Assembly (NCBI GenBank): GCA_051530055.1
Contig: JBMGUZ010000014.1
Coordinates: 1-57,940, forward strand
Direction of reading: 5' to 3'
From: Neoechinorhynchus agilis
Lineage: Eukaryota > Animalia > Acanthocephala
DNA: 57,940 bases
The first letter of the stretch is position 1; each line of letters begins with the position of its first letter. Shown piece by piece: positions 1-49,221 of this stretch. Position numbers and translations under genes: made by a program. The notes beneath the pieces are model-generated. The model saw nothing but the letters and a program-made list of their open reading frames with translations, made no database searches and was not told the origin of the DNA.

Positions 1-1
1 T

Positions 2-3000
2 ATTCCTCAACACAACGACATCGTAAATCAACAGCATTTTCAACAGCAAATCGAAATTGACTACAACGTTGACCCTGACGTACCTCAAAACAATCGTCAA
101 CACCTTGAAATCAATGAAGCGCATTATAAGTCAACAAATGGAAAGAATTTACAGTCAAATGAAGGTTTGGCCAGTACTGAACAACTGCAAGCACCGAACA
201 CAAACTGCGACGCAATCAATACAAACTTTCCATCGTCGAAATCCATCATACTAAACTACGTCGCGCGCTCAGATTCTCCCTTGGAATGTGGCTTATGCTT
301 TGCTTGGTTTGTTGGTAACTCGAGAGTAAAATCGCTCGAACAACATTTGATCTCTTCCCATGGAATCGACGCAATTACTTGGCGATGTCCTCTCTGCTTA
401 AAATACGAACACAAAGAAACGCGAAGTATCGGAACGCACGTCAGATCTTGTTCAAAGAAATTTCCGGCTAGATATCGTGAGTTAAGCAGCAATTCCTCTC
501 CTTCAGCCGCTTCAAAAGATTTTCGATCTGTCTCCGTTGGACGCTTTGCGTACTGCGGAATTGATGAAGATTTTGTATCGTGCGATGTCTGTGGTCTGAA
601 GATCTACGGTTTGGGTCTTTGCAAGGCAATGGTCGACCACCTGAAGAAGGATCATAAATCGTCGGTTGTGGAAATAAAATGCGGCTTGTGCGATAACAGA
701 TATACTGACGTCGTGTCCGCTCGCAGTCACGTCAACCAATGCAGAAAAAAAGATGCCCTGAATAAAATGAACATAAATGCCGAGAAAATTACATCAAAAA
801 ATGCTAGCTCAAGAGATGCGACGTCAGAAGATACTACCTCAAAAGGTATTACCTCAGAAGCTACTACCTCAAAAGATTCTACCTCAAAAGATTCTACCTC
901 AAAAGATTCTACCTCAAAAGATACTACCTCAGTTTTACCTCGGACCGCAGAGGGTACAATCAAAGGTGACGACGCTGGCTGTATCAGCCGGATAATTCTC
1001 GAATCTGAATCAAGTTGCGGAAGTGTTCAGGCTTTTAATGCCGAAAACTACAACCCTTCGAGCCTCTTGTTTAATGATTATGGATCGGGAGTCGGCGATG
1101 TCTCGTTTCATAGTGGAAATGTTGCAACTTCGCAATCTTATCCGCCCCATGACATAAAAGTATGTACCGCGTTGCAGCAAACATCTTTTGCGGAAGAAGA
1201 AGTTGAATGCCAATCTGCATCTACCTTTACCGTCTCGGCGTGCTACGAATTCGTCCTTAATGTACTGGAGGAACGTGCTTTGCACCCACGGTATCAAAAC
1301 TTTCTTCGTGGTCTAGCAGCAGAACTACGAGACCATCCTGAACCAGTAACACAAGAGCTTATGGACTCTATTGCCGGGAAATACGAAGCTTACCTAAGAT
1401 GCGGCCGAACGCTAATGACCAATCATTCCAGATCAACGAAAGCAAAGAATATGGGCCTTCGGATTGTTAAACTGAAAGTCGGACCTCAAATGGTACTAAA
1501 CGCAATTGCCTTCCATGTTTTCGACAATCCCGCGCAGGCGCATATTGTACTCCGGCGGATCTTGGACAACATAGGACAAAACACTGAGTACTATTCTGCT
1601 ATCATGACGCGCGTAGACGATGCCAATGTTAGTTTACAGTGTATCGTAGACAACCTTAAGAAGGGTCGGATATTGTCTCCTATATTCTGCATGTGGGCAG
1701 CGGCCTCAACTTTTAATTGCGATTTTCAAATTTTGACGCCATATGCCACGAAAATGAATGTTATTCGATCACGAACCGTCGCATCGAAGTCTTTTAATGT
1801 CTGGATGGAGGACTCGAAGCAATTCCCGTGCGTTAGGTGCAGGTTCTTGAATATTTCTCAACGACGTGCCATGAACAAGAAAAGAAATAGAGCTCTATAT
1901 TTCGCCAACACTACTCAACTTGCGAAGGAAACATTTGAAAATGTCTCATTGAACAGCTGCAAAATCCCCGCAAAAATGATAACCGACCATTTTGCCGGAC
2001 TGTTTCAAAGCATTGATACTTGCAAACAAAGTGAAGTCAACAGAAATAATGAACTCGCCAAATCAAACTGGAAGTGGATTGATGCAGAGGAAATCAAGAC
2101 CGCCCAAAGGAACATAAAGACATCCAGCGCACTTGGACCAGACAAGATAAGTTGTCGGCAGGTAATGGCTTTTGACCCTCACGTTGTTGGTCTCGTCTTG
2201 ATTTACAATATGGCCATGGAGGTAGGTGGACCACCTAAGGCATGGAAAGAAAATCGAACAATATTGATACCAAAAAATGGTGCGGACGAGAAGGCACTAA
2301 AGTGTGTTAACGGTTGGCGGCCTATTACGATTTCATCTGTGCTCATGAGAATCATGCACAGAATCTTGCTTGCACGTCTCCGGCAGGAGATAGACCTTGA
2401 TGTCAGTCAAACGTGCTTTGATGTGGAAGCCTGCCACTCAAACTTACTTACGATTCGAGCGCTACTTCGGCAATCCAGAGCTGTTAAAAGATCAATTGCC
2501 ATGGCCATCCTTGATGTAAAGTCAGCGTTTGACACCATCTCACACGATTCACTAAGAAATGCGTTATGCCGAACAATTAAGGATGCAGCGACAAAAGAGT
2601 ATATATTAAATGCATTTTCGAGCAGCCACACTAAAATTTATACTTCTACTGGTCCTCCCTCGGAGCCCATACACTTCAACCGAGGCGTGAAGCAAGGAGA
2701 TCCACTTTCGCCATTTCTCTTCGCCCTATGCATTGACGAAGTTCTGCGAAAGGTCCGAGAAAGTAGAGCAGGTTACGTCGAGGGCGCCACGTATATTCCT
2801 GCAATTGTATACGCGGACGACATATTGTTAATCGGAAACGATCAAGAAGAGCTGCAGTCTATGATTAACGTTGTCTCAGAGGAATTAAAGCACAAAGGTC
2901 TGCTTCTGTCGCCAAAAAAATGTCGAACCTACATTCAGAACTATCAGCGTGGGAAGTTGTCTGAGGAGGTAACGGCTTCTGTCAAATTAGAAGGCACTTT

Positions 3001-4213
3001 GTTGGAATGCATAACCGAAGGAGACACAATTCAATACCTTGGAGGTACACCATGGGCAAAATGTTCAAAAGAGTCCATATGTCAAATGATTGACGAACTT
3101 GCGTTTCGCACAAAACAGGCCCAATTAAACCCAACGCAAGCGGTCCACTTATTAAATGACTATGGAATTCCTCGTGTAATCGCGCAGCTGCAAAATGCCC
3201 ATGACCTTTCGACAACGTGCTTAAGTCAAATCGACCAGTATTGGCGCAAGACGATTAAAAAGATTCTATTCTTGCCAGCTTACATAAACAATGGAGCCTT
3301 TCATCTTCCTCTCAATCAAGGCGGTATGGGATTTAGAGGAATCGAACACGAGGTTTTGAGCAGCAGGAAAAAGGCTCACTCAACGGTTACTGGAAAGTAC
3401 CCCGAACTAAACCACCACATCAAAGGAGGCGAGAATATTTCGACATATGAGAGTTCGGCTGAGCGAGGTGCTAACTTGAAGAAGGCCTGGGAAGGGGCCG
3501 CGACTCAATCTCTAGGTGCTCAACACTTCTGGGATGGAAACTTCGATCGCCGCCTGATCAGTTTCAGGTATCGTCAAAGCCGCCACAAGGAATACGTCGA
3601 AAACGTAAAGATGCGATACCAGCTTCTAGAGGTTGGTACAGTGCTTTCCAAGCTGGACAAAAATAGAACGAGGAAATGCCGACATTGTTGCGCAGCAGAT
3701 GAATCGTGCCTTCACGTGCTTAATGAATGCAACTACATCACGAGGGCAATGATATCACGTCATGATGCAGTGCAAAAGCGTCTCGTTTGGGCGATTAAAA
3801 GACGAAATCCTGCTTTTGAAGTCATGACCGAAAACAGAATACATGATCCTGGGGGAAATCTACACAAACCCGACCTCATCATTGTTGATCGGGAAAATGG
3901 CAGGATAACAATTGCCGACATCGCAATCTACTACGAAACGAACATCAATCGTGGAGAGGAAATAACAAAACAAAAAGAAGAAAAGTACCTCCCCATTTGC
4001 GATGTAGTAGCTGCGCAATACAACGTAGAGGAACGCAACGTAGAAACGCTAGGCATTGCAGTCGGCTCAAGAGGTAGCTTTTCAAAAACATTATTAAAAA
4101 GACTGCGTTCACTCAATTTAAACACTGGGTGCGCAATAAATATGTGCCGCACCGCTGCCGAAAAGAGTCTTCAAGTGTATCATACATTTATGGGACGAAA
4201 GCAAACCAAGTAA
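2..4213 (+). CDS. R2-like polyprotein (>=1403 aa): 4 zinc fingers, OTU-like domain, RT, CCHC knuckle, restriction-like endonuclease
   Basis: The track ORF 167-4213 frame is also open from base 2, so the true start is upstream. Motifs: CGLC..H....H, CPLC..H...C, CDVC..H....H, CGLC..H...C; WRPITISS; LDVKSAFD; QGDPLSP; YADD; YLG; CRHC..H....C; RHD; KPDLII..ADIAI; KEEKY. Confidence 0.95.
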   Translation: MPQHNDIVNQQHFQQQIEIDYNVDPDVPQNNRQHLEINEAHYKSTNGKNLQSNEGLASTEQLQAPNTNCDAINTNFPSSKSIILNYVARSDSPLECGLCFAWFVGNSRVKSLEQHLISSHGIDAITWRCPLCLKYEHKETRSIGTHVRSCSKKFPARYRELSSNSSPSAASKDFRSVSVGRFAYCGIDEDFVSCDVCGLKIYGLGLCKAMVDHLKKDHKSSVVEIKCGLCDNRYTDVVSARSHVNQCRKKDALNKMNINAEKITSKNASSRDATSEDTTSKGITSEATTSKDSTSKDSTSKDSTSKDTTSVLPRTAEGTIKGDDAGCISRIILESESSCGSVQAFNAENYNPSSLLFNDYGSGVGDVSFHSGNVATSQSYPPHDIKVCTALQQTSFAEEEVECQSASTFTVSACYEFVLNVLEERALHPRYQNFLRGLAAELRDHPEPVTQELMDSIAGKYEAYLRCGRTLMTNHSRSTKAKNMGLRIVKLKVGPQMVLNAIAFHVFDNPAQAHIVLRRILDNIGQNTEYYSAIMTRVDDANVSLQCIVDNLKKGRILSPIFCMWAAASTFNCDFQILTPYATKMNVIRSRTVASKSFNVWMEDSKQFPCVRCRFLNISQRRAMNKKRNRALYFANTTQLAKETFENVSLNSCKIPAKMITDHFAGLFQSIDTCKQSEVNRNNELAKSNWKWIDAEEIKTAQRNIKTSSALGPDKISCRQVMAFDPHVVGLVLIYNMAMEVGGPPKAWKENRTILIPKNGADEKALKCVNGWRPITISSVLMRIMHRILLARLRQEIDLDVSQTCFDVEACHSNLLTIRALLRQSRAVKRSIAMAILDVKSAFDTISHDSLRNALCRTIKDAATKEYILNAFSSSHTKIYTSTGPPSEPIHFNRGVKQGDPLSPFLFALCIDEVLRKVRESRAGYVEGATYIPAIVYADDILLIGNDQEELQSMINVVSEELKHKGLLLSPKKCRTYIQNYQRGKLSEEVTASVKLEGTLLECITEGDTIQYLGGTPWAKCSKESICQMIDELAFRTKQAQLNPTQAVHLLNDYGIPRVIAQLQNAHDLSTTCLSQIDQYWRKTIKKILFLPAYINNGAFHLPLNQGGMGFRGIEHEVLSSRKKAHSTVTGKYPELNHHIKGGENISTYESSAERGANLKKAWEGAATQSLGAQHFWDGNFDRRLISFRYRQSRHKEYVENVKMRYQLLEVGTVLSKLDKNRTRKCRHCCAADESCLHVLNECNYITRAMISRHDAVQKRLVWAIKRRNPAFEVMTENRIHDPGGNLHKPDLIIVDRENGRITIADIAIYYETNINRGEEITKQKEEKYLPICDVVAAQYNVEERNVETLGIAVGSRGSFSKTLLKRLRSLNLNTGCAINMCRTAAEKSLQVYHTFMGRKQTK
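800..930 (+). repeat. 15-bp coding minisatellite (ACCTCAAAAGATTCT; TSKDS repeats) in the Ser/Thr-rich linker
   Basis: Tandem acctcaaaagattct units visible; protein reads TSKDSTSKDSTSKDTTS. Confidence 0.9.
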
Positions 4214-4315
4214 CAGAATATACAAACTAAGATTGAACAAAAAGAAGGACTATAAAGTATAAAATTGATACAATTTTGAATGCTGAGTGATTTATTTTAC
4301 TAATAAATTTGTGAC

Positions 4316-4430
4316 GCCAAATGCCTCGTCATCTAATTAGTGACGTGCATGAATGAATTAATGAGATTCCTACTGTCCCTGTCTGTAGCCTAGCGAAACT
4401 ACAGCCAAGGGTTCGGGCTTGGAGAGTAAC

Positions 4431-4468
<38 letters not shown>

Positions 4469-4548
4469 AGTCTGTGAAGAAACATGATGGGCGTAGAATA
4501 GGTGGGAGGCCGCTCCGGTGAAATACCACTACCATCATTGTTTCTTTA
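4316..4548 (+). rRNA. 28S: 28S rRNA fragment (~233 bp) starting at the R2 site
   Basis: GCCAAATGCCTCGTCATCTAATTAGTGACG...GAAGACCCTGTTGAGCTTGACTCTAG...GGTGAAATACCACTAC; breaks after TTTCTTTA. Confidence 0.95.
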
Positions 4549-6055
4549 TAAATAGTAATGTAAATTCAGTCAATTTTAACGATTTCAATAGCTTCAGTTT
4601 TATTGGCATTCTCGAAGGAGAAAGTAAATGGCTTGCATCGTTTATGAGAGATCTAGGCAAAAGCGGCGTTAACGCAGAGTACGAAAAAAAATGGGCGGAG
4701 GCAAAAACACAGGCAAACGGATATCAGGCCTTTACCAACGGATTCGCAGACCCAAATGCTATCATTCAGATACAGACAGGGCCATCACAGGCAATACACG
4801 GAATTGATAAAAATGCGAGCTGACTTAGAGGTTGGTGCCGTTATGGCAAGGATCTCAAACAATAGGACAAAAGCCTGTCGCCATTGCGCCCATCAAACAG
4901 AACGTGCTTGCACGTAATTAATCAGTGTGACTTCTCGACGGAAGCAATGATTAAAAGACACGACGACGTCGTGAGTCTTTATAGGCGCACTAAATGCAGT
5001 TGAAGCAAAATCCGCCAAAAGAGATTCAATCCGAGGCATCAGTTACACTGTCGATAGAAAAAATCACATTATGGACGACGGCGGCAACTTACACAAGTCC
5101 GACCTCATTGTGAGGACAAACATAAATGATCACAGATAGTGGTGATGTGGCGGTCTACTACGAGACCTCATTGGAACAAGCAGCAGTTATGGCGAAGATC
5201 ATATTTTGTTAGTCAGTAAGTGATAAGGCCGACTTTAACAAGCTCGATGTTGCGGTTACAGAATTGCGAAGTATCGGATTGTCCTTCAATCCAGCAAAAT
5301 GCGTTTCGTACAGCCACAGATTTTGTCAAGGCTCCAAGTCTCGGCCTCAAAATTATAAAGCTAAAGAAAAATTCAACAATGGTACTGGTGACCGCCGCCT
5401 TTCTCGTCCTCGAGAAACCTAGACAAAGGAGGAGAGTAAAAGACCGCAGCTTGGACCCTGTTTCACTTCATATAGTAAAAATGATTCTTGATGCTAATCT
5501 AACAGTAAATGAGACACTGGATGCTACTAAAAATTACAACGAACTATCAGTTCACTTCATCTTGAGGGCCGCAGCGACTGCCTATCAATGCGATTTTGTC
5601 GGGCAAACTCCAAGCGACGGTGTTCCTCTTCGAATTCGATCTCGCACAGCCACAAATTCATCATTTGGATTAATGAGTCAGGTACTTATCCCTGCGAAAG
5701 TTCTCGAGACCTCAAATCAAAGCAGTGACACGACCCTATTAAAAGACGTTAACCTTCTAAACGACTATGCAATTCCATCCTTAATGGTTAAGCTCGAAGC
5801 CTCATGCGACATCGCCCCGCTAATCTCAGACGTAAAGACGAGCAATGGAGGTGCAGACTAAAGAAGATTCTTAAACTTACAAGGAACTTAGGGGAAGGAG
5901 CTTTCGATGAGTGTGAGCTGAGTCTAATCTCGCCAAGTAATGCTTTAGTGTGGTAGATGAATAAAGCGAAAATAACTTCCATTCAAGGTACAGATGCTTT
6001 CTGGAGACGGAGAGCGATATCCTCCATCGATCAGAAGGCTCCATTGATAGGGAAA
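4549..6055 (+). pseudogene. Scrambled R2-like cassette (family D), copy 1
   Basis: Fragments in the order linker-CCHC-RLE, RT motifs 5-7, OTU-like, thumb (LLNDYAIP), HPRY-type helix; frameshifted. Confidence 0.85.
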
Positions 6056-46009: not shown

Positions 46010-48315
46010 AAAGATCTTCGCCGGACTTAAAATCTTAAGCGGCAAGTAAGTGAAGTGCTTTTGATAGAGCGTCACGTGGTTATCTTACTCGACGGGGTCT
46101 GAGCTCTTCTGTCTACGTCGTTCGCAGAGCACAGCCCTTTTAACCCGTGCCAATTCACGCTCCCAAATGTTATCTTTATTTTTAATTTAAAGTCGCTCCT
46201 GGGGGTTATTGACACCCCTAAACACGTTTTTTTAAGTCTCCGCGAGATTTGCTTCGTCTTTCAGCGAGACGCAGTTTTTTCGACGCTTCTTCCGTGTTTC
46301 TGTGACGTGATTTAGAAATTTTATTTACGTATTTTATCAATTTAATAGGGTCTCCGATAGGAATTTCTCGTAGATTTTAGATAATTAATAACAGTTTTAT
46401 TTTCTTTTAAGCTTTTATCCAGTTCTTATGAGTTCCTCAATAGACCGCCAGACTCCTGCTCTCTCGATGATCGAAGATGGTTATCCGATCACGGCCGAAA
46501 ATAACTTAGAATGTATTCTGTGCAATTTTCAGGCTATGGGCAGAACGAGGCACAGTCTCTTTCTTGAGCATATGAAAGAAAGTCATGCGCGAGGGCCAAT
46601 CTCATGGGTGTGTAAAATCTGCAACAATTTTCGGAGCGCAGCCCCAGGAAGCGTTGGAGCGCATACTCGCCAATGCAAGATTCTTAATGTCTCTGCATAT
46701 AGAGAGATCTTGAGAAAAATTGAGGAGGGTAACAAAACCTTTCCAGTGCTCAATGAGGCCGCAATTACCTACGCAGGGGGAACTTCACCAGCCGTCTGCC
46801 CGAGCTGCGATGAAAAAATTTTGGGTCGTGGGCAGTACAATTCTCTGGAAAACCACCTTAGAGTATGCCATTTGGCGAAGAGTATCACGTATATTTGCGC
46901 CCTCTGTAACACCCACTCCACTGCTTCGATTTACTCCGCCAGAGCGCATTATTCACAGTGCTTTAAGCGAGTTAAGGTAAAAGACGCGGACACTGGGGTA
47001 ACAACAAGTGAAGCCCAAGAAAGGAAAGACGGTTTATTTTGCGATAGGACCACTTACTGTGTCAGTGAGCACGCGGAAAGACCGGATATTTATGCCCCCG
47101 AAGAGGATGCCGTTGTCTCTCGTAGTGCAAGCCTCCCCAGCACGGAAAAAACACATTTATTCGGGGACGGGACTCATTTGTCTGACGGTCGCGACCCCAG
47201 TACACATGCGCGCGATGCTGCTGAGCAGGGTGTGGAGAGCCGTGAGCTGTCCTGCCCGCCGGTCGGCTTTGTGCCGTCTGCAGGTCACCTTCGTGAGTTC
47301 GTAGAGGTGCTGCAAGGTCCTACTTCCACTTCGCCACGCGAGTCGCGGAATATCTCGAGTCGACTTTTCGATTCTGTCGCGTCTGCAGCGCACATTTGGC
47401 TTGAAAACAGTGACGAGTTGTCGACTCCTTGGGTGCGACGTCCCGATTCTTTGGCGTCCAGTTTTTCGACAGGCGGTACGCTAATTGAACATGGAGAGAG
47501 AAATGAATCACAATTTAGTATCGAAGAGGCTTATGAGGGCGTCGTGAAGTCTCTTAAAAAGAATGGCCTTCACCCCCGATATAGGTTCTATCTGGAAACG
47601 GAGCGCAACGTCTTACGCCATTCAGAAGGACCGATCGATAAAGGCTTTGTCGAGATGGCTGCTACACGGTATGAAGATTACCTAAGATGCGGACGCAGTA
47701 AGGTGAGTCCCGAAGTCTCGAAAGCCAGACAAGCCGGCCTTAGAATAATCAAATTGAGAAGAGTTGCAACACAATCGCTTTGCGCGATCGCGTACCATGT
47801 CTACCGAAACCCAGCACGATGGAAGAAAGTCTCTGAAAAATTGGTCAGTGAGATTAACAGTAACATAGGATACTATCGTTTGATAGCTAATAATGTAGCT
47901 TAAGGATGATTCTAACTGGAGGCCCATAACCATATCTTCGCTGTTAATGAGAATTCTTCATCGCGTGATCTTAGCTAGGCTTAAGAAACAGGTCAGTCTC
48001 CACAAATCTCAGACAGGATCGGAAAATACAGCATGCATTTCAAACATACTCGTTCTGCGCGACATGCTGAAACAAAAGAGGGCACAACAAAAACCAATGG
48101 CAGTAGCCATGCTGGATATCAGGGCCGCTTTTGATACAGTATGTCACAAAACAATCGAAAAGGCGTTGAGAGATCACAACTGTTCGAACTATTTAAGCCG
48201 ACATTTGATGAACGTTTTCACCTCATCCTATACGCGAATCCATCTTCCAGGATCAAGCCCTTCGCAGCCTATTAGGTTTGACCAAGGCGTCAAGCAAGGA
48301 GATCCGCTTTCGCCG
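46010..48315 (+). mobile_element. R2-like family C 5' part (putative 5' UTR, 4 ZF, HPRY helix, partial OTU-like) plus an RT motif 2-4 fragment
   Basis: ORF 46428-47903 stops inside the OTU-like domain; then NWRPITISS...LDIRAAFD...QGDPLSP (47905-48315). Confidence 0.88.
46428..47903 (+). CDS. N-terminal 491 aa of an R2-like protein (truncated)
   Basis: CILC..H....H, CKIC..H...C, CPSC..H....H, CALC..H...C; LHPRY; GLRIIKL..AIAYHVY. Confidence 0.85.
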   Translation: MSSSIDRQTPALSMIEDGYPITAENNLECILCNFQAMGRTRHSLFLEHMKESHARGPISWVCKICNNFRSAAPGSVGAHTRQCKILNVSAYREILRKIEEGNKTFPVLNEAAITYAGGTSPAVCPSCDEKILGRGQYNSLENHLRVCHLAKSITYICALCNTHSTASIYSARAHYSQCFKRVKVKDADTGVTTSEAQERKDGLFCDRTTYCVSEHAERPDIYAPEEDAVVSRSASLPSTEKTHLFGDGTHLSDGRDPSTHARDAAEQGVESRELSCPPVGFVPSAGHLREFVEVLQGPTSTSPRESRNISSRLFDSVASAAHIWLENSDELSTPWVRRPDSLASSFSTGGTLIEHGERNESQFSIEEAYEGVVKSLKKNGLHPRYRFYLETERNVLRHSEGPIDKGFVEMAATRYEDYLRCGRSKVSPEVSKARQAGLRIIKLRRVATQSLCAIAYHVYRNPARWKKVSEKLVSEINSNIGYYRLIANNVA

Positions 48316-49189
48316 TGCGAGGTGCTAACTTGAAGAAGGCCTGGGAAGGGGCCGCGACTCAATCTCTAGGTGCTCAACACTTCTGGGATGGAAACTTTGA
48401 TCGCCGCCTGATCAGTTTCAGGTATCGTCAAAGCCGCCACAAGGAATACGTCGAAAACGTTAAGATGCGATATCAGCTTCTAGAGGTTGGTACAGTGCTT
48501 TCCAAGCTGGACAAAAATAGAACGAGGAAATGCCGACATTGTTGCGTAGCAGATGAATCGTGCCTTCACGTGCTTAATGAATGCAACTACATCACGAGGG
48601 CAATGATATCACGTCATGATGCAGTGCAAAAGCGTCTCGTTTGGTCGATTAAAAGACGAAATCCTGCTTTTGAAGTCATGACCGAAAACAGAATACATGA
48701 TCCTGGGGGAAATCTACACAAACCCGACCTCATCATTGTTGATCGGGAAAATGGCAGGATAACAATTGCCGACATCGCAATCTACTACGAAACGAACATC
48801 AATCGTGGAGAGGAAATAACAAAACAAAAAGAAGAAAAGTACCTCCCAATTTGTGATGTAGTAGCTGCGCAATACAACGTAGAGGAACGCAACGTAGAAA
48901 CGCTAGGCATTGCAGTCGGCTCAAGAGGGAGCTTTTCAAAAACACTATTAAGAAGACTGCGTTCACTCAATTTAAATACTGGGTGCGCAATAAATATGGC
49001 GCAAACGGCTGCTGCGAAGTCCATAGAAATTTTCCACATCTTCATGAACCGCACGCAACACAAATGAAGTAAACACACAAAGATTAGTATTCTTATGATA
49101 AACAACAACCTTATTAGAAAAATCTCTACTAAAACGTTCGATGTAAAATAACTATAAGAGCGCTGACGTTACTCTAATAAATTTGTGAC
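48316..49189 (+). mobile_element. Family A 3' part (CCHC plus RLE) with an alternative C-terminus and 3' UTR (A')
   Basis: Near-identical to 3463-4144 up to 48998, then unrelated except for the terminal CTAATAAATTTGTGAC|TAGCC. Confidence 0.92.

Positions 49190-49221
<32 letters not shown>

What the first reader, a model, noticed from the sequence alone, without database searches (positions are those of the whole stretch)
1..4315. Apparently intact R2-site retrotransposon with non-canonical DNA-binding architecture (2x CCHH-CCHC, no Myb)
Seen: an uninterrupted ORF of >=1403 aa with intact RT and RLE motifs, joined at the R2 site (TA of TAGCC missing). Families A and C both have four fingers as a duplicated CCHH-CCHC pair, and I see no Myb-type Trp-spaced domain. 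Established: described R2 clades have 1-3 fingers plus a Myb domain that contributes to target recognition. Inference: either a highly derived R2 lineage or another RLE clade that converged on the same 28S site. It is a candidate active enzyme with a different recognition mode, relevant to R2-based gene insertion.
Basis: partly seen in the sequence, partly recalled or inferred. Interest (0 to 1): 0.88.

Follow-up and report, generated by a model that had tools for sequence, protein, structure and literature searches.

The report
Myb-less R2 retrotransposon, near-complete copy
This is an almost complete, still-open copy of a jumping gene from a thorny-headed worm that hits the classic R2 spot in ribosomal DNA, yet it lacks the finger-plus-Myb unit thought to aim all R2 elements and instead carries a doubled finger pair and a dead OTU-type domain.

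Summary
Window 2-4210 is one open frame of 1403 codons. It has four fingers (CCHH-CCHC twice), intact RT, zinc-knuckle and RLE motifs, and a 3' end joined to 28S at the R2 site, with TA missing in this copy only.

The host is the acanthocephalan Neoechinorhynchus agilis, and the contig starts at or within a few bases of the element's 5' end.

- **Fingers:** both pairs are homologues of the ZnF3:2 module of lineage-A R2 (hhalign 98.3%).
- **Missing parts:** ZnF1 and Myb are absent by every test I could run.
- **In their place:** a three-helix bundle and an OTU fold (Z 16.7) without the catalytic Cys or His.
- **Phylogeny:** the RT/RLE belongs to a monophyletic, long-stemmed clade. It holds seven N. 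agilis families and four proteins from unidentified samples. It sits inside the R2 radiation, nested in neither lineage A nor D.
- **Recent activity:** probable. Conserved sites are kept, differences from a sister copy are 9 synonymous to 3 non-synonymous, probable poly(A) RNA runs hold identical full-length contigs, and unassembled 5'-truncated copies abut 28S.

The scan reached the same reading on other DNA of this genome (s1-037770, s1-037762). I found no publication describing it. No Utopia or NeSL references were available.

The parts
1..4315 (+). R2-site non-LTR retrotransposon, 'family A'. It is cut at, or within a few bases of, its 5' end by the contig start (window = G000:C14:1-57940).
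   Evidence: Run contigs extend only 11-29 nt upstream of base 1.
2..4213 (+). Single ORF of 1403 codons plus the stop codon. No ATG is visible. The frame would be continuous with the 28S-borne ATG if base 1 is the last T of ...ACTATGACT (inference).
287..451 (+). Finger pair 1: CCHH (287-361) plus CCHC (386-451), a homologue of the lineage-A ZnF3:2 module.
   Evidence: (hhalign 98.3%, E 1.6e-14).
581..742 (+). Finger pair 2: CCHH (581-655) plus CCHC (680-742). This pair-2 type is the only pair kept in the single-pair families.
790..932 (+). Tandem repeat encoding a Ser/Thr-rich (TSKD-type) linker. It lies within a poorly conserved stretch, residues about 250-400.
   Evidence: 790-857 vs 865-932, 82%. 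The alignment is gap-rich here.
1214..1411 (+). Conserved three-helix bundle (residues 405-470) with a near-invariant HPRY motif. It sits where a Myb would, but shows no detectable relation to Myb.
   Evidence: pLDDT 73-90; only generic helical matches, Z 5-6.
1418..1843 (+). OTU-fold domain (residues about 473-614) without the catalytic Cys or His, so a pseudo-deubiquitinase.
   Evidence: OTUD5, E 8e-4; pLDDT 85-97; OTUD3, E 5.5e-6, TMt 0.81; Z 16.7.
1874..3343 (+). RT N-terminal extension, RT fingers/palm and thumb (residues 625-1114). Pfam RVT_1 covers 756-1014, with YADD at nt 2810-2821.
3677..3988 (+). C-terminal CCHC zinc knuckle (3677-3730) and restriction-like endonuclease motifs: KPD at 3866, IADIA at 3911, KEEKY at 3974.
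   Evidence: (aligned to the R2Tg RLE, residues 1159-1399).
4214..4315 (+). 3' UTR of 102 nt with no poly(A) tail. It ends in AATAAAT plus 9 nt, a motif shared by all families and by the other-sample relatives.
4316..4548 (+). 28S rDNA fragment starting at the R2 site, with TA of TAGCC missing. It is about 233 bp, about 95% identical to the window's long 28S 3' piece, and is followed by other R2-like debris.
48281..49191 (+). Second, internally deleted family-A copy (element 2679-2712 joined to 3463 onward). It is 98% identical over 3463-4145, has a divergent C-terminal tail and 3' UTR, and has an intact |TAGCC junction at 49190.
   Evidence: The joint is seen in reads.

Best explanation
Window 1-4315 is an essentially full-length, recently active copy of a distinct lineage of the R2 superclade, found here in the acanthocephalan Neoechinorhynchus agilis.

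Shown:
- It is a single-ORF, RLE-type non-LTR element.
- Its 3' end is joined to 28S at the canonical R2 bottom-strand nick (...AAGG|TAGCC).
- In relatives, and in 5'-truncated family-A copies, the upstream 28S always ends at ...AACTATGACT. That is 9 bp upstream of the nick, so insertion removes up to 9 bp.
- The protein keeps the R2 core: N-terminal extension, RT, thumb, CCHC knuckle and RLE.
- Its N-terminus has two copies of the CCHH+CCHC module homologous to lineage-A ZnF3:2.
- It has no ZnF1 and no recognisable Myb.
- A three-helix bundle plus a catalytically dead OTU fold lies before the RT.

Inferred mechanism: it inserts by ordinary target-primed reverse transcription.
- The ZnF3:2-type module reads the DNA next to the nick and holds the 3' UTR RNA. 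In solved lineage-A complexes, ZnF2 reads DNA beside the nick and ZnF3 holds the RNA.
- The high-affinity upstream anchoring normally given by ZnF1-Myb is supplied by the second finger pair, the three-helix/OTU module, or both.
- One pair is enough for site choice, because single-pair families use the same site.
- The shifted 5' junction would reflect a second-strand cut about 9 bp upstream instead of 2 bp.
For: Identity and site:
- R2Tg E 1.4e-81 against R2Bm 3.7e-39.
- 3' junctions at |TAGCC in five N. agilis families and at |TAGCG in the other-sample loci L060 and L064.
- 5' junctions at AACTATGACT| in L050, L054, L057, L058 and L064.
- Raw WGS reads join that same 28S end to family-A positions 2615 and 2740.

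Architecture:
- Fingers.
- Finger pairs against lineage-A ZnF3:2: hhalign 98.3%, E 1.6e-14. The best PDB hit is R2 protein 9nl2 residues 10-67.
- Myb tests negative.
- OTU fold Z 16.7, Foldseek E 5.5e-6, profile hit to OTUD5 E 8e-4, with the Cys position filled by M/L/Q/A and no conserved His.

Clade:
- In an exhaustive search, only P0001, P0121-P0124, P0174 and P0175 match the region upstream of about residue 617. There is then a drop from E 1e-123 to 1e-74 for ordinary R2s.
- The clade of 11 has 100% support and lies inside the R2 radiation.

Activity:
- winA departs from the clade at only 6 of 163 highly conserved columns, the second-lowest count of 11 members.
- 9 synonymous to 3 non-synonymous differences against copy 2.
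- Contigs of four runs from four samples, very probably the poly(A) mRNA-seq of PMC12690905, hold 99-100% of the stretch's sampled words. In the two that I laid, the contigs show zero differences.
- Read depth rises about six-fold from 5' to 3', as expected from 5'-truncated copies.

Roles of ZnF3:2, ZnF1 and Myb are taken from PMC12180492 and PMC11204384.
Against: - The copy lies in a graveyard of R2 and rDNA fragments, next to a 233-bp degenerate 28S piece, not in an intact rDNA unit.
- Its junction lacks TA.
- It is about single-copy. The 5' depth is about 20x, where about 33x would be expected for unique DNA if all reads were worm.
- No start codon or 5' junction is in the window.
- The 'RNA' label of runs X1-X4 is a guess by the tool, and DNA carry-over is possible.
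- No HDV-like ribozyme was detected.
- The three-helix bundle could be a Myb remnant diverged beyond detection.
- No Utopia, NeSL, R4, HERO or CRE references were in the tree, so 'inside R2' rests on APE-LINE outgroups and two unidentified long branches.
- Placement relative to lineages A and D is unresolved (AU p 0.37 for a union with A).
- DNA binding by any domain is untested.
Confidence: 0.78

Rival explanations
1. It belongs to, or descends from, a Utopia/NeSL-type RLE lineage. Such elements are Myb-less with N-terminal finger pairs. On this reading it independently acquired the R2 site in 28S, so its resemblance to R2 in target is convergent.
For: - There is no ZnF1-Myb.
- Hassan et al. 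classify Myb-less relatives as Utopia, and report ZnF3:2-like co-folded pairs in Porifera Utopia (PMC13188248, PMC13580325).
- Protease-fold domains before the RT are known in NeSL and Utopia-1_TSP (Ulp1 type, PMC4640811).
- The clade has a long stem (0.84) and is nested in neither lineage A nor D.
Against: - The nearest non-clade proteins, among 1.8 billion representatives, are ordinary finger-plus-Myb R2s at E 1e-74.
- The clade falls among them when rooted on APE LINEs.
- The nick position is the same to the base.
- The core scores strongly against R2Tg.
Confidence: 0.12
2. The copy is a dead relic. The open frame survives only because the insertion or segmental duplication is young. The family is no longer mobile, and the transcripts are read-through from neighbouring DNA.
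For: - The context is a graveyard of fragments.
- TA is missing at the junction.
- Only about one full-length copy exists.
- Copies 1 and 2 share the same downstream flank, so they may stem from one duplicated unit.
- The copy is present with only two near-fixed differences in another individual, so it is a stable locus.
Against: - The 9:3 synonymous to non-synonymous ratio is not neutral decay.
- Conserved sites are the second-best kept of 11 members.
- 5'-truncated family-A copies joined to 28S appear in reads but not in the assembly.
- The full length is present in all four probable RNA runs.
Confidence: 0.25
3. A Myb is present after all. On this reading the conserved three-helix unit at residues 405-470 is a Myb with its tryptophans replaced, so the architecture is ZnF3:2-ZnF3:2-(Myb)-OTU and only ZnF1 is lost.
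For: - It has the same position relative to the RT, and a similar size (about 55-60 residues, three helices), as the R2 Myb.
- Aromatic residues (F409, Y431, Y461) recur at intervals.
Against: - hhalign probability is 0.2% against a 23-sequence R2 Myb profile.
- 0 of 18 members touch any Pfam Myb/SANT model, while controls do.
- Structure matches are generic long helical bundles at Z 5-6, with no Myb or homeodomain listed.
- The aromatic spacing (22 and 30) does not fit a Myb repeat.
Confidence: 0.15

Closest known systems
R2 lineage A (R2Tg/TaGu, PlaMe; PDB 9dou, 9nl2-9nl4)
   Same: - Same 28S nick site.
- Same single-ORF core: N-terminal extension, RT, thumb, CCHC knuckle and RLE (E 1e-81).
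- A CCHH+CCHC finger module homologous to ZnF3:2.
- No poly(A) tail.
- 5'-truncated copies.
   Different: - No ZnF1 and no Myb.
- The ZnF3:2 module is duplicated.
- A three-helix unit plus a dead OTU fold is inserted before the RT.
- The 5' junction is 9 bp rather than 2 bp upstream of the nick.
- The RT is not nested in lineage A.
Utopia non-LTR elements, including the Porifera Utopia of Hassan et al. 2026
   Same: - Myb-less RLE elements with N-terminal finger pairs.
- Some pairs are predicted to co-fold like ZnF3:2.
   Different: - Utopia targets U2 snRNA genes or is weakly specific, and none is reported in 28S at the R2 site.
- No OTU domain is reported.
- The phylogenetic relation was not testable here.
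NeSL-1 and Utopia-1_TSP (nematodes)
   Same: A cysteine-protease-fold domain sits N-terminal to the RT of an RLE-type element.
   Different: - Theirs is a Ulp1 (C48) domain at the N-terminus, presumed active.
- Here it is an OTU fold, without catalytic residues, placed between the fingers and the RT.
- The targets differ.
R9 of bdelloid rotifers (Gladyshev and Arkhipova 2009), the only R2-type element reported from Syndermata
   Same: An R2-superclade element in 28S of the same animal group.
   Different: As cited in PMC5035012 and PMC13580325, R9 uses another 28S site. From my own recollection of the paper's abstract, not checked here, it makes a 126-bp duplication and is described as structurally like other R2s. 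The present clade uses the canonical site with a small deletion.

Membership tests
R2 (site-specific 28S RLE non-LTR retrotransposon) | Insertion at the conserved 28S site ...AAGG|TAGCC | tested here: met
   The 3' junction is at 4315/4316, with TA lacking. |TAGCC is intact in the sister copy at 49190 and in L050, L052, L054 and L055. Truncated family-A copies abut the upstream half-site.
R2 (site-specific 28S RLE non-LTR retrotransposon) | Single ORF with RT, C-terminal CCHC knuckle and PD-(D/E)xK-type RLE | tested here: met
R2 (site-specific 28S RLE non-LTR retrotransposon) | N-terminal ZnF1 followed by a Myb domain (called the 'hallmark' in PMC13188248 and PMC13580325) | tested here: not met
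   The last finger before the linker is CCHC, not CCHH. Myb tests were negative. Full-length relatives have no Myb upstream of the fingers either.
R2 (site-specific 28S RLE non-LTR retrotransposon) | RT groups with R2 to the exclusion of other RLE clades | tested here: inconclusive
   The clade lies inside the R2 radiation against APE-LINE outgroups. No Utopia, NeSL, R4, HERO or CRE references were obtainable.
R2 (site-specific 28S RLE non-LTR retrotransposon) | 5' HDV-like self-cleaving ribozyme | tested here: inconclusive
   No Rfam match at E<=10 in window 1-600 or across the L058 junction. Such ribozymes are hard to detect by sequence.
R2 lineage A | ZnF3 (CCHH) and ZnF2 (CCHC) forming one co-folded unit | tested here: inconclusive
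   Sequence homology is strong. The co-fold itself was not modelled, because the single-sequence model of residues 67-733 failed (pLDDT 35).
R2 lineage A | RT nested within lineage A | tested here: not met
   The ML tree places the clade outside the 29-row lineage-A group. A sister relation is not rejected (AU p 0.37).
Utopia/NeSL | Target in U2 snRNA or spliced-leader genes | tested here: not met
   All junctions found are in 28S.
Utopia/NeSL | RT groups with Utopia/NeSL references | not testable with these tools
OTU deubiquitinases | OTU alpha/beta fold | tested here: met
   OTUD3 Z 16.7, rmsd 3.6 over 137 residues. Foldseek E 5.5e-6. OTUD5 profile hit E 8e-4.
OTU deubiquitinases | Catalytic Cys (Cys box) and His | tested here: not met
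   The Cys position is M in this copy and M/L/Q/A in all 21 aligned members. There is no conserved His in the domain. The only invariant polar residue is the Cys of a P-C pair in the last strand.

The most novel reading that the evidence does not exclude
ZnF3:2-type finger pairs, helped by a three-helix/dead-OTU module, are sufficient to aim an R2 enzyme at the canonical 28S site without ZnF1-Myb. If so, this syndermatan clade is a living example of the 'ZnF3:2 donor' state. Hassan et al. postulated that state for the origin of lineage A, and so far it is known only from sponge Utopia elements that do not target rDNA.
Probability: 0.35. Interest if true: 0.85.

Novelty: new variant of a known kind. 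Interest (0 to 1): 0.74.

Why it matters
R2 proteins are being developed for site-specific gene insertion. The current picture is that ZnF1 is universal, that Myb is the hallmark, and that the two together give high-affinity target binding (PMC11204384, PMC13188248, PMC13580325).

A natural, apparently functional enzyme that reaches the same nick site without either would show a second way to read that site. It would also offer a compact ZnF3:2-only recognition module to test.

It bears on an open question stated in those papers, namely where the ZnF3:2 module of lineage A came from. Until now the only other carriers were sponge Utopia elements that are not in rDNA.

An OTU fold stripped of its catalytic residues and kept across species is, as far as I could find, unreported in non-LTR elements. 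It suggests a captured host domain reused for binding.

Tried and rejected
- **Single-sequence AlphaFold of residues 67-733:** it failed (pLDDT 35).
- **Rfam on ten loci at once:** it failed internally. I mapped rDNA flanks by BLAST against the window's own rDNA instead.
- **Word-indexed protein search on residues 400-625:** it found nothing. The exhaustive search did find relatives, so that blank is a limit of the method.
- **Organism behind GCA_028748445.1, GCA_028748465.1, SRR6291331 and SRR19136356:** no paper in the library names these accessions. I did not search for SRR34340284.
- **Uninserted 28S R2 site:** none is in the assembly, even with 3 mismatches. The 9-bp deletion is therefore inferred from the universal 28S sequence, not from this worm's empty site.
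- **'Three-helix unit = Myb':** considered and not supported.
- **'Nested in lineage A':** considered. It is not found in the tree, but a sister relation is not rejected.
- **HDV-like ribozyme search:** negative.
- **Complex prediction:** none was run, because I claim no protein-protein binding.

Full report
**What is there**

The window is the first 57,940 bases of contig C14 of a 46-Mb assembly. The best protein hit is annotated Neoechinorhynchus agilis, and earlier notes of the scan name the same acanthocephalan.

From base 2 an open frame runs 1403 codons to a stop at 4211-4213. It is followed by a 102-nt 3' UTR. At 4316 comes 28S rDNA beginning GCCAAATGCC, the R2 site with TA of TAGCC missing.

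The 28S piece is only about 233 bp long and about 95% identical to the window's long 28S 3' piece. Behind it lie fragments of other R2-like elements. The whole window is a graveyard of rDNA pieces and at least three R2-like families.

**Is it R2-like?**

Against solved structures, the RT (residues 625-1114) and the RLE region (1159-1399) match zebra-finch R2Tg at E 1.4e-81, and Bombyx R2Bm at 3.7e-39. Pfam finds RVT_1. The catalytic motifs of the RT, the CCHC knuckle and the RLE are all present.

**The junctions**

Related families elsewhere in the genome end at ...|TAGCCAAATGCC: L050, L052, L054 and L055. So does the second family-A copy at 49190.

Their upstream 28S always stops at ...GGACGTAACTATGACT, 9 bp before the nick. 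It is sometimes followed by a few T/C-rich bases.

The same two junctions occur in a relative from another organism: L064 reads ...AACTATGACT| and |TAGCGAAATGCC.

Raw WGS reads from another worm join that same upstream half-site directly to family-A positions 2615 and 2740. This gives family A's own 5' junction type, and it shows 5'-truncated copies that the assembly lacks at 95% identity or more.

No uninterrupted site exists in the assembly, although 23 upstream half-sites do.

**N-terminus**

The four fingers are real, and they recur in families L050, L051, L058/P0001 and the window's family C. Families L052 and L053, and protein P0121, have one pair only.

A profile of 17 such pairs matches a profile of lineage-A ZnF3-ZnF2 at 98.3% probability, E 1.6e-14. 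Its best hit in the PDB is residues 10-67 of R2 protein 9nl2, which is that protein's ZnF3:2.

The two pairs are about 25% identical. In a small tree the N. agilis pair-2 sequences form a supported group (98/99) that includes the single-pair families. The pair-1 sequences group at 89/79. The duplication therefore predates the families.

**No ZnF1, no Myb**

- After the last CCHC comes a Ser/Thr-rich, unconserved linker.
- Pfam finds no Myb in the ORF at E<=1.
- The conserved unit at residues 405-470 scores 0.2% against a 23-sequence R2 Myb profile.
- That unit hits no Myb/SANT model in 18 clade members. Control R2 Myb segments hit PF00249 in 7 and PF13921 in 3 of 23.
- Full-length relatives whose ORF starts at the 28S junction have only low-complexity sequence before the fingers. 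A Myb upstream of base 1 is therefore very unlikely.

**What sits there instead**

With a 21-sequence alignment, AlphaFold gives a confident model (mean pLDDT 75, core above 90). It shows three helices at model residues 17-71 and an alpha/beta domain at 79-220.

The alpha/beta domain is an OTU fold:
- OTUD3 at Z 16.7, rmsd 3.6 over 137 residues
- Foldseek E 5.5e-6, TMt 0.81
- a sequence-profile hit to OTUD5 at E 8e-4
- nearest Atlas clusters are OTU proteins, commonest in rotifers

In the profile alignment the catalytic Cys of OTUD5 faces M in this copy and M/L/Q/A in all members. No His is conserved in the domain. It is a dead OTU fold.

The three-helix unit matches only generic helical bundles.

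**The clade**

An exhaustive HMMER search with residues 390-1403 found proteins whose match extends upstream of about residue 617:
- P0001 and P0175, both annotated N. agilis
- P0121, P0122 and P0123, each matching from the three-helix unit onward
- the fragment P0174, of unknown source, which matches only from the second half of the OTU fold

P0124 groups with these by score (E 1.1e-122) and by its cluster-mate P0262, but its own match starts only at about residue 627. Scores then fall from E 1e-123 to 1e-74 for ordinary R2 proteins, whose matches start at about residue 617-630.

The non-Neoechinorhynchus members come from two NCBI assemblies and three SRA runs that I could not name. P0262 and P0122 also have CCHH-CCHC twice.

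In an 84-row tree of the RT-to-RLE region, rooted on APE-type LINEs:
- The 11 clade members are monophyletic (100) on a long stem.
- They lie within the radiation of finger-plus-Myb R2s.
- They lie beside the lineage-D-type group, not inside the 29-row lineage-A group.
- Forcing them together with lineage A costs 5.5 log-likelihood units and is not rejected (AU p 0.37).

No Utopia, NeSL, R4, HERO or CRE reference could be obtained. This is the main gap.

**Is this copy functional?**

For:
- It differs from the clade at only 6 of 163 highly conserved columns, the second-best of 11 members.
- Over 683 nt shared with copy 2, the differences are 9 synonymous to 3 non-synonymous.
- Four runs from four samples of one study hold 99-100% of the stretch's sampled words. 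Their contig sets of 16-19 Mb fit the per-worm poly(A) mRNA-seq described in PMC12690905.
- In the two runs that I laid, the contigs show zero differences.
- Depth in WGS reads climbs from about 20 to about 140 towards the 3' end.

Against:
- The RNA label is the tool's guess.
- The locus is about single-copy.
- It sits in junk DNA.
- It lacks TA at the junction.
- It is shared, with two near-fixed differences, by another individual.

**The 5' end (inference)**

- Run contigs extend at most 29 nt beyond base 1.
- A 31-mer unitig would stop there if unique sequence began at base 2.
- In L050 and L058 the ORF is in frame with the ATG inside the 28S half-site (ACT ATG ACT). NCBI's model P0001 starts at that ATG.
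- The window's frame fits the same arrangement if base 1 is the last T of GACT.
- If so, the element is 4314-4315 bp long with no 5' UTR.

**Mechanism**

This is inferred from the solved lineage-A complexes (PMC12180492). There, ZnF3:2 sits next to the first-strand nick. ZnF2 reads bases, ZnF3 holds the 3' UTR pseudoknot, and the module influences where the second strand is cut. ZnF1-Myb give high-affinity binding (PMC11204384).

Here I propose that a ZnF3:2-type pair does the nick-proximal reading. The upstream anchoring would fall to the second pair, the three-helix/OTU module, or both.

Single-pair families using the same site show that one pair suffices.

**Comparison with the literature**

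- Hassan et al. 2026 surveyed 300 species, with no Syndermata among the phyla they list. They treat Myb as the R2 hallmark and found ZnF3:2-like pairs without Myb only in sponge Utopia elements outside rDNA (PMC13188248).
- The October 2026 review repeats this (PMC13580325).
- My full-text search for OTU together with non-LTR or RLE terms found no report of such a domain in these elements.
- The scan itself reached the same reading on other DNA of this genome (s1-037770, s1-037762).

Noticed in passing
window 4300-4315; 49175-49190; L050, L052, L054, L055, L060, L064 3' ends: Every family, and the relatives from other samples, ends with AATAAAT followed by 7-9 bases and then the 28S junction, with no poly(A) tail. 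It may be a poly(A) signal placed to cut near the junction, or a motif read by the RT.
   Followed up: partly
L050 (G000:C1:242000-251999, minus strand) and L058 (G000:C2:250000-258000) 5' junctions: The ORFs run straight from the 28S junction, with no 5' UTR, and are in frame with the ATG inside the 28S half-site ACTATGACT. NCBI's protein model P0001 starts at that ATG. The relative L064 is not in frame and has about 390 nt before its called start.
   Followed up: partly
whole assembly G000: There are 23 copies of the upstream half-site GGACGTAACTATGACT but no uninterrupted R2 site, even with 3 mismatches. Every assembled 28S copy carrying this site is interrupted, or the true rDNA array is unassembled.
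   Followed up: partly
window 36116-36122 (minus strand): The 28S half-site ...ACTATGACT is joined here to sequence that is not R2. Another note of the scan calls it mitochondrial DNA. The break is at the same base as the R2 5' junctions, which fits a second-strand cut at that position.
   Followed up: no
window 36567-39740 (minus strand): The Rfam hits for 18S (37872-39740) and for 28S positions 665-1888 (36567-37909) overlap, with no ITS or 5.8S between them. This is a rearranged rDNA unit.
   Followed up: no
window 48281-49191: Copy 2 of family A is a mosaic. It has an internal deletion (2712 joined to 3463 with GT filler, also seen in reads of another worm). It is 98% identical up to 4145, and then has a clearly different C-terminal tail and 3' UTR.
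   Followed up: partly
L053 (G000:C1:19298000-19307999) and L055 (G000:C1:124000-133000): In these two families the upstream 28S stops about 110 bp earlier (...AAAACAAAGCATT). This is a second class of 5' junction or a larger target deletion.
   Followed up: no
L056 (G000:C1:353000-362000), ORF 2326-5388: One open frame of 1021 aa carries eight fingers, which is two four-finger N-termini in series. It is probably a chimera of two elements.
   Followed up: no
window 4316-4400 and all 28S flanks: The 28S next to the site differs from the near-universal sequence at several C-to-T positions (GACGTGCATG, GGATTATTGAGA, CCTACTG). I could not tell whether this is the worm's functional rRNA or decay of inserted units.
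   Followed up: no
window position 4010 and 4201 (reads of run X8): Six and eight reads join family-A sequence at these points to unrelated DNA (a C-rich TAAACTCAACCCCC... stretch and an AT-rich stretch). These are further truncated copies outside 28S, or rearrangements.
   Followed up: no
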